Virus record (IMG/VR): IMGVR_UViG_3300022744_000020
Span: 124,001 to 188,000 of that record
DNA length: 64,000 nucleotides
Reading direction: 5' to 3' (one strand)
Of the stretch, positions 56,604 to 59,843 are shown one piece after another (the first letter of the stretch is position 1; each line of letters opens with the position of its first letter). The position numbers and the translations under genes are program-made. The notes under the pieces are model-generated. The model was not told the DNA's origin and did no database searches. It saw nothing but the letters and a program-made list of their open reading frames with translations.

Positions 56604-57881
56604 ATGGACATTTCAGCAATCTTTGATTCTCTATCTGGCTGGATAGAGAAATACAACACCCTGATGGGCAATAACGGCTTCCTTGCCGCAACTCTAGCGG
56701 GAGGACTCATGTACGCACTGTCTTGGATTTTCGAAAGACTGTGCGCAACTGTCAATTGGCTCTTCCGGTTCAGTGTGATTCAACTCACCCTGCAATACGA
56801 CGGAGATCAATCGAATCAAGTCAACTACGCCATCTTTCTCCGGTGGGTTCAACCCAAACTACTGAGTGCCTTTTCTCGGATCGCAACAGTGCGAACAAAG
56901 AAAAGAGACTGGTACACCGACGAAGATAGTGAGCCAGGACAACGATTTCTGTCGGTGTCTCAAGGGCTTCATTTCTTCTTTTACGAGAAGCGACTCTTCT
57001 GGATATTCCTAAGCATCAACGATACTCTCGCCACCGAAACCAACAAAGAAGCCATTAACGTTTACAGTTTCGGCTTTGATACGTCTGTTTTCAAGCGGAT
57101 GGTGATGGAGGTTTTCCCAGCTAAAGTGGACGAAGGAAAGCTCAAAGTTTTTTCTATGTCGACCGGCATCGGGAAAGACGAGATCGGAGACGACATCTGG
57201 TCCAGTAAGGAATATCCTCCTCGTTTGCTTGATTCGGTAGCGATGCCTGACGCTACCCGGAAGCAATTAGAAGATTCAATGGAAAGATTCCTGAGTATGC
57301 GGGAGTGGTACACGAGGAACGGAATCCCATACAAGCTGGGTATTTGTTTCTATGGTCCTCCCGGTACCGGAAAAAGCTCGATCTCTCGGGCGATAGCGCA
57401 TCACCTCAAGCGCAATCTTTATTGCATCAACCTCAGCGAAGTTTCCAACCTGGCCTTCACTGCCCTGCTTCGAAACATTCCTCCAAAGTCGGTGGTGCTG
57501 TTTGAAGACGTGGACACCAACACGAACCTCCACTGCCGCACCTACGGTCACAAAGAGGACGACAAGAAGGTAGGTCTGGGAACTGTTCTCAACGGAATCG
57601 ATGGTGCAGAGGTTCTGGATGATCTCGTGCTCATCTTTAATACCAACGCGTATGAAGTGCTTGACCCAGCCTTTCGCCGCGCCGGGCGTTTTGATTTACC
57701 GCTGTATATCGGCAACCTCAATGCAGAGCTGGTAAAGAAGCGGATGCATTACTGCTATGGAGAGGAAGCCCTGGCAATCGATCTGCCAGAAGGGTTTGAG
57801 ATAAACGGATCCGAACTCCAGAGGATCATCAACGAAAATCCATTGGATGCAAAAGCCGCCATTCTTCGCTTGACAGCATAA
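56604..57881 (+). CDS. BCS1-like AAA+ ATPase with N-terminal membrane anchor
   Basis: WYTRNGIPYKLGICFYGPPGTGKSS, VLFEDVD, LNGIDG, SRH TNAYEVLDPAFRRAGRFD; TM segment NNGFLAATLAGGLMYAL. Confidence 0.85.
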   Translation: MDISAIFDSLSGWIEKYNTLMGNNGFLAATLAGGLMYALSWIFERLCATVNWLFRFSVIQLTLQYDGDQSNQVNYAIFLRWVQPKLLSAFSRIATVRTKKRDWYTDEDSEPGQRFLSVSQGLHFFFYEKRLFWIFLSINDTLATETNKEAINVYSFGFDTSVFKRMVMEVFPAKVDEGKLKVFSMSTGIGKDEIGDDIWSSKEYPPRLLDSVAMPDATRKQLEDSMERFLSMREWYTRNGIPYKLGICFYGPPGTGKSSISRAIAHHLKRNLYCINLSEVSNLAFTALLRNIPPKSVVLFEDVDTNTNLHCRTYGHKEDDKKVGLGTVLNGIDGAEVLDDLVLIFNTNAYEVLDPAFRRAGRFDLPLYIGNLNAELVKKRMHYCYGEEALAIDLPEGFEINGSELQRIINENPLDAKAAILRLTA

Positions 57882-57941
57882 GCACCCATGGGGTGAGCAC
57901 TTGCGTGCTCACCCCTTAGTTATTTTTTTGGATGCGACATA

Positions 57942-58481
57942 ATGGCAAACTCAGGCGATGGATTCACCGACAACGGCGTTATCAAGTTCAGTATCAATTT
58001 CCCCCCAAACGAGGAACGCAAGGATACTCCTTTGTTCACCAGAACAAGAAAAATCTTATCCAAAGACATCGGAGGTAGATGCTATGTTTGCAATCGAACA
58101 GCCAAGGAGTCTGGTTCTGCACTAGAAGCGCACCATCATCCGATCATGCGAGCTTTCATGCCGATCGTGGATTGGGAGAGGTTCTCCAAAGAAGCAAAAG
58201 CTGGTATTTGGGGTGCTCGTATTGCGTCCTTTGACTGGTCTAAGTTCGATCCGAACAACCCTGTAACCTTTGTAGACGACATGCGTTACAACGGGATGCT
58301 TCTCTGCGTTGATCACCACCGCACCGCAAATCAGGGCATCCATAATTTGCCGTACCCTCTGTTCATCGCCCAGAAATATGCGAAAGAAGGATACGTCTTC
58401 AGTGGCAATGAAGTGATTGTTCGAGGTCACGATACCGCCGCCCAACAAACGCTGACGGATATTGGTTTGTCCAAAATTTAA
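57942..58481 (+). CDS. HNH-like Zn-binding protein
   Basis: RCYVC...LEAHHHP...NGMLLCVDHH...GIH pattern. Confidence 0.5.
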   Translation: MANSGDGFTDNGVIKFSINFPPNEERKDTPLFTRTRKILSKDIGGRCYVCNRTAKESGSALEAHHHPIMRAFMPIVDWERFSKEAKAGIWGARIASFDWSKFDPNNPVTFVDDMRYNGMLLCVDHHRTANQGIHNLPYPLFIAQKYAKEGYVFSGNEVIVRGHDTAAQQTLTDIGLSKI

Positions 58482-58579
58482 TAGCGGTACATTATCAATC
58501 TGATTCGGAGCCATACTCCCAATCCGTCGTAAATCTTCAAGACGAAAAACTGAAGAAATCACGTTCAGAAGGATCCATC

Positions 58580-59197
58580 ATGCGTTTTCTCTCACTCTTC
58601 CGTCCGATCTGGATGGCAGCGATCTTCAGTCTGGCTGCGCTCTTCATCCCGATGAGTTCTCAGGCCCAGACCAATCACGGCTTCACCGTCACCCTCAACG
58701 GCGACTGGTATCTCCAAGTGGGGGATGTCCTGAATCAGAGTGATCCCGGAATCTCCATCGTCGGCCTGGAATACGGAACCGGTCCATTCCGTGAGGGTGG
58801 GGCTATTTTCCAGCACTTCACGGGCAACGCCACCGAACTCCAACCCTTCCCTGGCTACTCGGACTACTACGGTCTCAATCAGTGGGGCTTCAGCCCGGTT
58901 GCTCCTGGCGATCGTTTCTACTTCTCGGGTTTGGACCTGGACATTCTGCAACCGGGACTGATCCCGGATGGAAACTACATCGACACTGCCGGAGGCACCA
59001 TGCGCGATGCCTACGTGGAAGTGTTGTTCTCGGACGGCTTCTACAAACGGCTGAGTCTGAACAGCACGCCCTGGCTGCAAACGCAGATCCTGCAGTTCAC
59101 CGAACAGGTGAGCCCCGTGCCTGAGCCGAGCGAGGCCACGATGCTGATCCTGGGTCTGGCGATGCTCGGAGTGCATCGCCGTCGACAGAAGCGTTGA
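58580..59197 (+). CDS. PEP-CTERM sorting-domain exported protein
   Basis: Signal peptide ending SSQA; C-terminus VPEPSEATMLILGLAMLGVHRRRQKR = VPEP motif + TM helix + Arg cluster. Confidence 0.9.
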   Translation: MRFLSLFRPIWMAAIFSLAALFIPMSSQAQTNHGFTVTLNGDWYLQVGDVLNQSDPGISIVGLEYGTGPFREGGAIFQHFTGNATELQPFPGYSDYYGLNQWGFSPVAPGDRFYFSGLDLDILQPGLIPDGNYIDTAGGTMRDAYVEVLFSDGFYKRLSLNSTPWLQTQILQFTEQVSPVPEPSEATMLILGLAMLGVHRRRQKR

Positions 59198-59220
59198 TCG
59201 CTGACGACTGAAGTCTGAAT

Positions 59221-59252
59221 CAGAGTCCAAGCCGTAATCGGCTTGGACTCTG
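59221..59252 (+). terminator. Hairpin terminator
   Basis: CAGAGTCCAAGCCG-TAAT-CGGCTTGGACTCTG, 14 bp. Confidence 0.75.
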
Positions 59253-59267
59253 TATCTATTTTATTTT

Positions 59268-59336: not shown

Positions 59337-59843
59337 ATGGCACGAGTAGAATGGTGGTTTGGGCGACCTGTGTTTTTCGGCGATCACGTGCGCAACGCAT
59401 ATTGCGGAAACGCAAGATTGATGGGTGAAGATTTCGGAGTCCCGGCCCTGAAGGAAATTTCCTCAGTTTGGGACCAATTCAAAGCCCCTGACTTCATGAA
59501 CTTCTTAGAGGAGATCTATGTTTTCATTGGCAAGAATCTCGAGGAGAAGCTTTCCCCGAATCAGCTCTATGCGGCAATCGCTCATGAGCTAGGACATTAC
59601 GAGTTCAGGCACTGCTTTAAACCCCCTAGGGATATGTCAGAGCGTCTGGCCCAGGAAATGGAGGCTGATCAATTCGCCATTTCTTTAGGTGCCGACCCCG
59701 AAAGCTTACTGGAAGTGATCGCTCTGATAAACGCGGAAGAGATTAAAGAGCTTTCAAAGACCAAGACTCCAGCCGAGATCGGCAAAATCTTGGACCAACA
59801 TTACAAGGACATGGGTCCCAGATACTTGGCTTTGTCCAAGTAA
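59337..59843 (+). CDS. Small M48-like zinc metallopeptidase
   Basis: AAIAHELGHYEFRH and EMEADQFAISLG; no TM segment. Confidence 0.75.
   Translation: MARVEWWFGRPVFFGDHVRNAYCGNARLMGEDFGVPALKEISSVWDQFKAPDFMNFLEEIYVFIGKNLEEKLSPNQLYAAIAHELGHYEFRHCFKPPRDMSERLAQEMEADQFAISLGADPESLLEVIALINAEEIKELSKTKTPAEIGKILDQHYKDMGPRYLALSK

What the first reader, a model, noticed from the sequence alone, without database searches (positions are those of the whole stretch)
58580..59197. Phage-encoded PEP-CTERM protein that would need the host exosortase
Seen: a signal peptide plus a textbook VPEP-TM-RRR C-terminus, in a compact gene with its own terminator. Established: PEP-CTERM proteins are exosortase (EpsH/XrtA) substrates linked to exopolysaccharide/floc systems in Gram-negative bacteria such as many Betaproteobacteria. 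No exosortase is present in this window. Inference: the phage places a protein on the infected cell surface using host sorting machinery, possibly for superinfection exclusion, receptor masking or biofilm manipulation. It also points to an exosortase-positive host.
Basis: partly seen in the sequence, partly recalled or inferred. Interest (0 to 1): 0.7.

Follow-up and report, generated by a model that had tools for sequence, protein, structure and literature searches.

The report
Jumbo-phage gene for an exosortase-sorted protein
A large lytic phage carries a well-kept gene for a small secreted protein whose tail is the address label read by a bacterial surface-sorting enzyme that the phage lacks, so it must borrow the host's; dozens of other uncultured phage genomes do the same.

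Summary
Window 58580-59197 (+) encodes a 205-aa protein with a signal peptide, a 147-aa beta-sandwich domain and a C-terminal VPEP / membrane helix / RRRQKR tail. The tail passes PF07589 (23.2 bits, cut-off 20.7) and TIGR02595 (17.9, cut-off 16). A strong terminator follows.

The window lies in a 270-kb phiKZ-like phage genome that encodes chimallin and is rated 98% complete. That genome has no exosortase and no second PEP-CTERM gene. The locus is not chimeric: four alleles sit in the same AAA-HNH-gene order on independent metagenome contigs.

- The domain belongs to a small unnamed family of PEP-CTERM proteins.
- Among the Burkholderiales genomes sampled, bacterial homologues occur only in Sphaerotilus (14 of 33 genomes). 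The three Sphaerotilus genomes checked each have an exosortase and 10-14 PEP-CTERM proteins; the one exosortase typed is XrtB.
- The phage alleles form one clade, are under purifying selection (dN/dS about 0.1) and are shuffled by recombination.

The case is not unique: 40 of 41 sampled IMG/VR records picked by a tail pattern pass PF07589, nine of them near-complete. Sorting by the host exosortase is a well-supported inference. The biological role, transcription and host are untested. I rate it a new variant of a known kind, of moderate interest.

The parts
57890..57915 (+). Terminator-like hairpin after the AAA ATPase gene. It is the upstream boundary of the HNH + PEP-CTERM unit.
   Evidence: 11-bp stem with 8 G-C pairs and a T-rich tail.
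57942..58481 (+). HNH endonuclease gene (179 aa). It is the upstream neighbour, with no terminator between it and the PEP-CTERM gene.
   Evidence: phrog_8048, E 1e-22. It holds the same position in the relatives L003-L006.
58569..58573 (+). Shine-Dalgarno-like AAGGA, 6 nt before the ATG.
   Evidence: Read directly from the sequence.
58580..58666 (+). Signal peptide (codons 1-29), with predicted cleavage after SQA.
   Evidence: Sequence features. The QA before the mature protein is invariant in all 8 close homologues. The AF2 model gives a low-confidence N-terminal helix, with the folded core starting at about residue 34.
58667..59107 (+). Ectodomain (codons 30-176): a beta-sandwich of an unnamed family with the motifs DWYLQ.G.V.N.S, GLDLD and FSDG.
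   Evidence: The profile search finds 59 cluster representatives, nearly all about 200 aa. AF2 pLDDT is about 97-98 across the core. There is no Pfam, NCBIfam or PHROG model for it and no PDB relative.
59108..59194 (+). PEP-CTERM sorting domain (codons 177-205): VPEP at 59117-59128, membrane helix at 59135-59173, basic cluster HRRRQKR at 59174-59194.
   Evidence: PF07589 23.2 bits against 20.7; TIGR02595 17.9 against 16. This part is more conserved between the window and L003 alleles than the ectodomain.
59195..59197 (+). Stop codon TGA.
59221..59262 (+). Intrinsic terminator of the gene.
   Evidence: 14-bp stem with 9 G-C pairs, a loop of 4 and a T-run. About 96% identical in the relative L004.
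59337..59843 (+). Downstream neighbour, an M48-like metalloprotease gene (168 aa). It is context and is variable among relatives.
   Evidence: PF01435, E 6e-7, and phrog_87. It is largely deleted in L004 and is 140 aa in L143.

Best explanation
The gene is a functional accessory gene ('moron') of a nucleus-forming, phiKZ-like jumbo phage. An ancestor of this phage lineage captured it once from a bacterial family of small PEP-CTERM proteins.

Proposed mechanism, all inferred:
1. The phage transcribes the gene during infection.
2. The protein is translated in the cytoplasm and exported through the host Sec system by its signal peptide.
3. It is held in the inner membrane by its C-terminal helix, with the basic cluster on the cytoplasmic side.
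4. The host's own exosortase handles it from there. That enzyme would be XrtB-type if the host is Sphaerotilus-like. It recognises the VPEP motif, removes the anchor and passes the beta-sandwich domain to the cell envelope or exopolysaccharide matrix.

The most likely purpose is to change the surface or matrix of the infected cell. Adsorption sites would be blocked against competing phages and against futile re-adsorption of progeny to debris. This is the job that the lipoprotein Llp does for phage T5 (comparison from my own knowledge).

Shown here: the gene, its domains, its conservation, purifying selection, recombination among alleles, the lack of a phage exosortase, and the presence of an exosortase (XrtB where typed) in the only bacterial genus sampled that has homologues. 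Inferred: expression, cleavage by the exosortase, surface display, the role and the host.
For: Identity of the protein:
- PEP-CTERM models pass their cut-offs. This is the only such hit in the genome.
- No exosortase is found in a genome rated 98% complete.

Phage origin:
- The genome has the phiKZ major capsid protein (513 bits), gp29PR sheath and chimallin.
- The flanking genes match phrog_7485, phrog_8048, phrog_87 and phrog_464.
- Virion genes lie in the same window.

The gene is kept and functional:
- Four alleles occur in the same gene order on contigs from different samples.
- dN/dS is 0.07-0.11.
- VPEP, the helix and the basic tail are retained in all alleles although synonymous sites are near saturation. 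A plain membrane anchor would not need the PEP motif.
- A related strain carries an in-frame 30-nt deletion in a loop.
- The gene has its own Shine-Dalgarno site and terminator.
- Its GC3 is 0.72. Only the capsid, sheath, chimallin and two other ORFs score higher, and three of those five are the major structural or shell genes.

Origin and host:
- The phage alleles form one clade (support 100/99) inside a bacterial PEP-CTERM family.
- Homologues were found in 14 of 33 Sphaerotilus-genus genomes. In a 301-genome sample of its family only the two Sphaerotilus genomes had one, and in a 401-genome sample of its order only the Sphaerotilus centre genome did.
- The three Sphaerotilus genomes checked each carry an exosortase and 10-14 PEP-CTERM proteins. 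The one typed is XrtB (408 bits, cut-off 275) with a B-type EpsI next to it.
- The nearest cultured relatives of the phage infect Burkholderia, Ralstonia and Xanthomonas.

Link to exopolysaccharide: the bacterial homologue always lies beside a c-di-GMP turnover gene and an operon of a PgaC-like synthase, WecB, a deacetylase-like protein and YaiO.

Generality: 40 of 41 sampled IMG/VR records carry PF07589 hits. Nine are at least 90% complete and four have terminal repeats. In one, the gene lies 1.3 kb from the large terminase gene.
Against: - There is no direct evidence of transcription. The RNA-library contigs are patchy and may be DNA carry-over.
- There is no evidence of cleavage or surface display.
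- The predicted complex with a Sphaerotilus XrtB gave no answer.
- The host is unknown. The phage alleles are only about 39% identical to the Sphaerotilus proteins, and the tree does not resolve Sphaerotilus as the sister group.
- Phage GC (51%) is far below that of Sphaerotilus (about 68%).
- The fold is a generic beta-sandwich, so it gives no functional clue.
- An obligately lytic phage has only a short time in which a surface change can pay off.
Confidence: 0.55

Rival explanations
1. The tail is only a membrane anchor. The protein stays in the inner membrane with its beta-sandwich in the periplasm and is never processed by an exosortase. It acts there, for example by blocking DNA entry of superinfecting phages or by binding a periplasmic host factor.
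For: The topology (signal peptide, ectodomain, one helix, basic C-terminus) would give a stable type I membrane protein in any Gram-negative host. Exosortase processing was not shown, and the complex prediction gave no answer.
Against: The VPEP motif and the whole PEP-CTERM architecture are kept in all four phage alleles and in the bacterial family, although synonymous sites are saturated. A simple anchor does not need PEP. The bacterial relatives live in genomes that have an exosortase.
Confidence: 0.15
2. The protein is an exosortase decoy. Made in excess by the phage, it saturates or blocks the host exosortase. Host PEP-CTERM matrix proteins are then no longer sorted, the floc, sheath or exopolysaccharide matrix loosens, and progeny escape more easily.
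For: GC3 is as high as in the most expressed phage genes, which fits high expression. The C-terminal third (residues 152-205) is better conserved than the ectodomain between the window and L003 alleles. PEP-CTERM proteins are needed for floc formation in Aquincola (PMC9850573).
Against: The ectodomain is under purifying selection (pN 0.08-0.21 against pS 0.64-0.84) and keeps all family motifs. A pure decoy would not need this. In the P0003 allele the tail is no better conserved than the rest.
Confidence: 0.12
3. The gene does nothing useful for the phage. It would be a neutral passenger, host DNA contaminating the record, or an assembly chimera.
For: GC is 58% against about 48% in the flanks. 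The homologues are bacterial.
Against: The same junctions appear in independent contigs from several samples and studies. dN/dS is about 0.1. The phage alleles form one clade with deep internal divergence. In this phage, high GC3 also marks the capsid, sheath and chimallin genes.
Confidence: 0.03

Closest known systems
Bacterial PEP-CTERM / exosortase substrates, such as the floc-associated PEP-CTERM proteins of Zoogloea and Aquincola (PMC9850573; exosortases XrtA and XrtB cleave PEP-CTERM according to bioRxiv 10.1101/2023.06.07.544157)
   Same: The architecture is the same: signal peptide, a small domain of about 150-250 aa without Pfam annotation, then PEP motif, helix and Arg cluster at the very C-terminus. 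It passes PF07589 and TIGR02595.
   Different: It is encoded by a lytic jumbo phage that has no exosortase, so it would escape the host's own regulation. It does not reach the cut-off of any named NCBIfam PEP-CTERM subfamily, and those hits cover only the tail.
Unnamed Sphaerotilus family of 200-aa PEP-CTERM proteins (P0005-P0008; loci L002, L007, L009-L011)
   Same: The ectodomain is homologous (37-40% identity, E 1e-30 to 1e-36). Length, signal peptide and tail match.
   Different: The bacterial genes have 65% GC. They sit after a PAS-GGDEF-EAL gene beside an exopolysaccharide operon. The phage alleles form a separate clade on a long stem.
Phage-encoded surface proteins that use host sorting pathways: T5 Llp and the Cor lipoproteins (Lol pathway), and the prophage LPXTG protein SasX (sortase). 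This comparison is from my own knowledge and was not tested here.
   Same: The logic is the same. The phage supplies only a substrate with a host address label, and the host machinery places it at the cell surface.
   Different: The sorting signal and machinery differ (exosortase). There is no sequence or fold relation. No function has been shown for the protein studied here.
PEP-CTERM protein HOG10 of the Dehalococcoides mobile element or virus IME1 (bioRxiv 10.64898/2026.09.15.751708)
   Same: It is the only published mention I found of a PEP-CTERM domain in a virus-like element.
   Different: IME1 is an integrative element of a Chloroflexota host, not a tailed jumbo phage, and the ectodomain is unrelated. 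The paper mentions the domain only in passing.
Other PEP-CTERM ORFs in IMG/VR viral genomes, such as L023 in a 102.5-kb genome with terminal repeats
   Same: The same signal is carried by viral genomes that lack an exosortase.
   Different: The ectodomains are unrelated, since no relative of this family was found in IMG/VR. These look like independent captures, and several genomes carry two or three genes in tandem.

Membership tests
PEP-CTERM sorting-domain proteins (PF07589 / TIGR02595) | The match to the domain model is above the curated cut-off. | tested here: met
   PF07589 23.2 bits (cut-off 20.7), residues 179-202. TIGR02595 17.9 bits (cut-off 16), residues 180-204.
PEP-CTERM sorting-domain proteins (PF07589 / TIGR02595) | The domain is at the extreme C-terminus: PEP motif, then a hydrophobic helix, then a basic cluster, then the stop codon. 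| tested here: met
   VPEP 180-183, helix 186-198 (the AF2 helix spans 185-204), HRRRQKR 199-205, then the stop.
PEP-CTERM sorting-domain proteins (PF07589 / TIGR02595) | An N-terminal signal peptide is present. | tested here: met
   Judged by inspection only. There is a basic n-region, a 15-residue h-region and SQA|Q, and the QA is invariant in the 8 close homologues. No SignalP-type predictor was available.
PEP-CTERM sorting-domain proteins (PF07589 / TIGR02595) | An exosortase co-occurs in the same genome. | tested here: inconclusive
   PF09721 is absent from the phage genome, which is rated 98% complete. An exosortase is present in all three Sphaerotilus genomes tested that hold homologues, and the one typed is XrtB. 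The host is not proven.
PEP-CTERM sorting-domain proteins (PF07589 / TIGR02595) | The protein is cleaved or sorted by an exosortase. | not testable with these tools
   The complex prediction with a Sphaerotilus XrtB gave no answer. This needs an experiment.
Named NCBIfam PEP-CTERM subfamilies (NF038129, FxDxF NF038126, PepA NF033554, XDP1 NF041927 and others) | A whole-protein score above the family cut-off that covers the ectodomain. | tested here: not met
   All scores are 13-31 bits against cut-offs of 50-125, and all matches are confined to residues 170-204.
Unnamed 200-aa beta-sandwich PEP-CTERM family (alignment A3) | A homologous ectodomain with the motifs around Q46, N52, G68, D119, D121 and G153. 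| tested here: met
   There are 59 representatives at E<=1e-3 and 41 at E<=1e-10 among 1.84 billion proteins. The motifs are conserved. The phage clade lies inside the family tree.
phiKZ-like nucleus-forming jumbo phages (the genome that carries the gene) | Chimallin, a phiKZ-type major capsid protein and the phiKZ sheath protein are present. | tested here: met
   PF25677 47.9 bits (cut-off 27), PF25620 513 bits, PF20961 148 bits. The virion protein is 35% identical to those of Burkholderia, Ralstonia and Xanthomonas jumbo phages.
Phage superinfection-exclusion surface proteins (Llp / Cor type) | Sequence homology or a lipobox. | tested here: not met
   There is no PHROG hit at E<=0.1 and no match in 50,697 GenBank phage records. 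The signal peptide has no lipobox cysteine. The resemblance is only in the logic, not in family membership.

The most novel reading that the evidence does not exclude
Capturing PEP-CTERM proteins may be a general viral strategy that has not yet been described. Under this reading, many unrelated phages of exosortase-bearing bacteria supply their own substrates to the host exosortase, and so re-dress the exopolysaccharide matrix or cell surface of infected floc-, sheath- or biofilm-forming cells. In this jumbo phage the substrate would be a recombining allele cassette whose signal peptide, ectodomain and tail are swapped among strains. That is the pattern expected of a protein engaged in a phage-phage or phage-host arms race at the cell surface.
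Probability: 0.35. Interest if true: 0.72.

Novelty: new variant of a known kind. Interest (0 to 1): 0.55.

Why it matters
PEP-CTERM/exosortase sorting is widespread in environmental Gram-negative bacteria and is tied to floc and biofilm formation, but its biochemistry is still poorly defined.

- **A new route for phages.** A phage that supplies only the substrate shows that viruses can reach the host surface through this pathway. Lipoprotein and sortase substrates of other phages do the equivalent.
- **A handy probe.** The protein is a small, well-folding natural substrate that could be used to study exosortase specificity.
- **A host-prediction marker.** An uncultured phage with a PEP-CTERM gene should infect an exosortase-positive host. 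Here the evidence narrows a 270-kb jumbo phage from freshwater and wastewater to Sphaerotilus-like Burkholderiales, which are filamentous bulking organisms in activated sludge.
- **A wider pattern.** PEP-CTERM genes recur in complete viral genomes. I found no paper on this except one passing mention.

Tried and rejected
- **Complex prediction.** The mature phage protein with a Sphaerotilus XrtB gave no answer (score 0.00), so it counts neither for nor against.
- **Expression.** Only Logan contigs of 'METAGENOMIC RNA-Seq' wastewater libraries were available. They cover the gene in patches, have no strand information, and one run is flagged as probably DNA. The result is inconclusive.
- **Fold and function.**
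  - Foldseek against PDB gave nothing at E<=1e-3.
  - A profile search against PDB sequences gave nothing.
  - The Atlas feature hits to CBM_2, CBM_3 and an 'aggregation factor core' score below 0.8, within the tool's noise range. Carbohydrate binding is therefore kept only as a lead.
- **GC as evidence of recent transfer.** I rejected this as a simple argument. The highest-GC3 genes of this phage are the capsid, sheath and chimallin genes. Two other alleles of the gene have phage-typical GC3 of 0.47 and 0.54.
- **Promoter.** The sigma-70 scan found nothing upstream. An 8-mer enrichment in the upstream regions of all ORFs gave no phage promoter motif. The temporal class is unknown.
- **Close phage relatives in IMG/VR.** None was found by the AAA protein or the major capsid protein.
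- **GenBank phages.** There was no tblastn match to the protein.
- **Tandem paralogues.** I checked the row of 205-227-aa ORFs at 50.1-54.2 kb. They are not paralogues.
- **Diversity-generating retroelement.** I dismissed this as the cause of the divergence. The divergence spans the signal peptide and the whole ectodomain, and synonymous sites are saturated. That fits allele replacement better.

Full report
**1. The observation**

Window 58580..59197 (+) is an ATG-initiated ORF of 205 codons. An AAGGA Shine-Dalgarno-like site lies six bases upstream. A strong intrinsic terminator follows at 59221-59252, with a 14-bp stem, 9 G-C pairs and a T-run.

The product has three parts:
- a typical signal peptide, MRFLSLFRPIWMAAIFSLAALFIPMSSQA|QT;
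- a middle region of about 147 residues;
- a C-terminus VPEP-SEATMLILGLAMLGV-HRRRQKR that ends at the stop codon.

The tail passes Pfam PF07589 (23.2 bits; gathering score 20.7) and NCBIfam TIGR02595 (17.9 bits; cut-off 16). In a six-frame search of the whole genome it is the only such hit (E 3.5e-5), and no control genome reaches the cut-off. The somewhat longer antisense ORF 58592..59230 is an artefact of the GC-rich third codon positions.

**2. What the surrounding DNA is**

The window is bases 124001-188000 of a single 270,383-bp IMG/VR virus record that CheckV rates 98% complete.

- The record encodes a phiKZ-type major capsid protein (PF25620, 513 bits), the gp29PR sheath protein and a chimallin (PF25677, 47.9 bits).
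- The window itself holds virion proteins (phrog_3013, phrog_3248, internal head proteins).
- The nearest cultured relatives, at about 35% identity for a 975-aa virion protein, are jumbo phages of Burkholderia, Ralstonia and Xanthomonas.

It is therefore a nucleus-forming, phiKZ-like jumbo phage, and presumably strictly lytic.

The immediate neighbours are phage genes: a BCS1-like AAA ATPase (phrog_7485), an HNH endonuclease (phrog_8048), an M48-like metalloprotease (phrog_87) and a DUF4326 protein (phrog_464). The HNH gene and the PEP-CTERM gene lie together between two terminators, at 57890-57915 and 59221-59252. The whole genome has no exosortase (PF09721).

**3. The locus is not a chimera**

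A search of 5.8 billion protein clusters found three other alleles at 85%, 68% and 68% identity. All lie on short metagenome contigs from other samples. Each contig keeps the phage gene order where it reaches far enough: AAA - HNH - PEP-CTERM gene - (M48) - 144-aa ORF - DUF4326.

Near-identical DNA occurs in at least 21 freshwater and wastewater runs from many studies. One strain carries an in-frame 30-nt deletion at 58809, in a loop that also varies in length across the family.

**4. The ectodomain**

No Pfam, NCBIfam or PHROG model covers residues 30-176. A profile of the core was searched against 1.84 billion representative proteins. It found only 59 proteins at E<=1e-3 (41 at E<=1e-10). 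Nearly all are 180-220 aa and have the same layout of signal peptide, domain and sorting tail. Of the 54 aligned, 38 pass PF07589 themselves, and a few carry the VPDSG- or IPTL-CTERM variants.

AlphaFold2 with this alignment gives a confident beta-sandwich (mean pLDDT 90.6; about 97-98 across residues 34-175). The structure searches were uninformative:
- Foldseek found nothing in the PDB at E<=1e-3.
- The best AlphaFold DB clusters are other small PEP-CTERM proteins.
- Weak hints of carbohydrate-binding modules are leads only.

The domain is thus a member of a small, unnamed family of PEP-CTERM proteins of unknown function.

**5. Bacterial relatives and the likely host**

The closest bacterial homologues (37-40% identity) are in Sphaerotilus MAGs.

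| Sample searched with the core profile | Genomes with a match |
|---|---|
| Sphaerotilus genus | 14 of 33 |
| Its family | 2 of 301 (both also in the Sphaerotilus-genus set) |
| Its order | 1 of 401 (the Sphaerotilus centre genome) |

In Sphaerotilus the gene always follows a PAS-GGDEF-EAL gene. It lies beside a divergently transcribed operon that encodes a PgaC-like GT2 synthase, a deacetylase-like protein, WecB and a YaiO barrel. It is the least conserved gene of that locus (62-76% against 82-95%).

All three Sphaerotilus genomes tested carry an exosortase and 10-14 PEP-CTERM proteins. The one exosortase typed is XrtB (TIGR03113, 408 bits against a cut-off of 275), flanked by a B-type EpsI and an EpsG-like kinase.

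In a maximum-likelihood tree the four phage alleles form one clade (support 100/99) on a long stem. The clade lies inside the subfamily that also holds the Sphaerotilus clade, but its sister group is unresolved. This indicates a single, old capture from a bacterium of this kind. A Sphaerotilus-like Burkholderiales host is plausible but not proven.

Codon usage agrees with a GC-rich host. The genes with the highest GC3 in the phage are the capsid (0.84), sheath (0.80) and chimallin (0.77) genes, against a genome mean of 0.57.

**6. Selection and recombination**

Between the window and the relative L003, the flanking AAA and HNH genes are 97-98% identical in protein, with dS 0.25-0.35. The PEP-CTERM protein is only 68-69% identical, with dS about 1.9 and dN 0.22.

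The drop in DNA identity starts exactly at the start codon and ends near 59033. The last 160 bases and the terminator are 84-96% identical.

The more distant relative L006 shows the opposite pattern. Its HNH protein is 88% identical, and its PEP-CTERM allele is the closer one at 85%. Segment by segment, the four alleles have different nearest partners for the signal peptide, residues 30-151 and residues 152-205. Their GC3 ranges from 0.47 to 0.76.

This is the pattern of allele replacement and intragenic recombination within a pool of phage alleles. It is not the pattern of point-mutational drift. Throughout, dN/dS stays near 0.1 and the VPEP, helix and basic tail are retained. The protein and its sorting signal are therefore under selection in the phage.

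**7. How it most likely works**

The steps shown are the gene, its signals, its conservation, the absence of a phage exosortase, and the presence of an exosortase (XrtB where typed) in the only sampled genus with homologues.

The inferred steps are as follows:
1. The protein is made during infection and exported by Sec.
2. It is anchored by the C-terminal helix.
3. The host exosortase recognises it at VPEP, cleaves it and passes it to the envelope or exopolysaccharide matrix.

The role I consider most likely is to alter the infected cell's surface or matrix. Adsorption sites would be masked against competing phages and against wasteful re-adsorption of progeny. This is analogous to the lipoprotein Llp of phage T5 (from my own knowledge, not tested). 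The link of the bacterial homologue to an exopolysaccharide locus, and the shuffling of ectodomain alleles, fit a protein that works at a contested surface.

The rivals are these:
- The tail is only an inner-membrane anchor for a periplasmic function.
- The protein is a decoy that jams the exosortase and loosens the matrix.
- The gene is a neutral passenger or an artefact, which is largely excluded.

A predicted complex with XrtB gave no answer. RNA-library contigs could not settle transcription.

**8. How unusual it is**

No GenBank phage record matches the protein, and no IMG/VR contig encodes a relative of its ectodomain. The principle, however, is not unique.

- About 70 of the 81 matches examined are clear PEP-CTERM tails that end at a stop codon.
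- Of 41 records sampled, 40 pass PF07589. Nine of these are at least 90% complete and four have direct terminal repeats. Several carry two or three such genes in tandem.
- Thirty-three of 36 extracted proteins pass PF07589, and almost none has another Pfam domain.
- In a complete 102.5-kb genome the gene lies 1.3 kb from the large terminase gene.
- Five such records have no exosortase.

In the searchable literature I found no study of phage-encoded PEP-CTERM proteins. The only mention is a passing one, for a Dehalococcoides element.

**9. Verdict**

The function, the expression and the host remain to be shown, and the case is one of a recurrent class rather than a singleton.

I rate it a new variant of a known kind: a known sorting signal and the known logic of a phage moron, combined in a way not yet described and with an unnamed ectodomain family. 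Interest is moderate (0.55).

Noticed in passing
window 59337-59843: The M48-like metalloprotease gene (PF01435, phrog_87) just downstream of the PEP-CTERM gene varies among relatives. It is largely deleted in L004 and is 140 aa in L143. A secreted or membrane protein gene next to a small metalloprotease gene might form a functional pair.
   Followed up: partly
window 57942-58481: An HNH endonuclease gene (phrog_8048) shares a terminator-bounded unit with the PEP-CTERM gene. A homing-type nuclease next to a recombination hotspot could help to explain the allele swapping.
   Followed up: no
G000:C1:263965-266187, 73764-75878, 101585-103576 (outside the window; loci L019-L021): The three genes with the highest GC3 in the phage are the phiKZ-type capsid (0.84), sheath (0.80) and chimallin (0.77) genes. 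The genome mean is 0.57. GC3 seems to track expression, which suggests codon adaptation to a GC-rich host.
   Followed up: partly
L002:1-10606, L007, L009-L011 (Sphaerotilus): There is a conserved locus: YaiO, WecB, a deacetylase-like protein, an unknown 531-aa protein and a PgaC-like GT2, transcribed divergently from a PAS-GGDEF-EAL gene and the PEP-CTERM family gene. It looks like a c-di-GMP-controlled poly-N-acetylhexosamine system with an attached matrix protein. The PEP-CTERM gene is the fastest-evolving gene in the locus.
   Followed up: partly
L023 (G726:C1:21679-22487), L034 (G733), L072 (G724:C1:48267-49993), L097 (G764): Other IMG/VR viral genomes carry two or three PEP-CTERM genes in tandem. 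Some of these genomes are complete with terminal repeats. The ectodomains have no Pfam family.
   Followed up: partly
window 58809 (run X5): A wastewater strain has an in-frame 30-nt deletion (10 codons) in a loop of the ectodomain that also varies in length across the family.
   Followed up: no
window 56604-57881: A BCS1-like AAA ATPase (PF00004 plus BCS1_N, phrog_7485) has a hydrophobic N-terminal segment. BCS1-type ATPases translocate folded proteins across membranes. Its position two genes upstream of an exported protein may or may not be meaningful.
   Followed up: no
window 58592-59230 (-): A 212-aa antisense ORF overlaps the whole gene and is longer than it. A naive longest-ORF gene caller picks it in place of the real gene.
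   Followed up: yes
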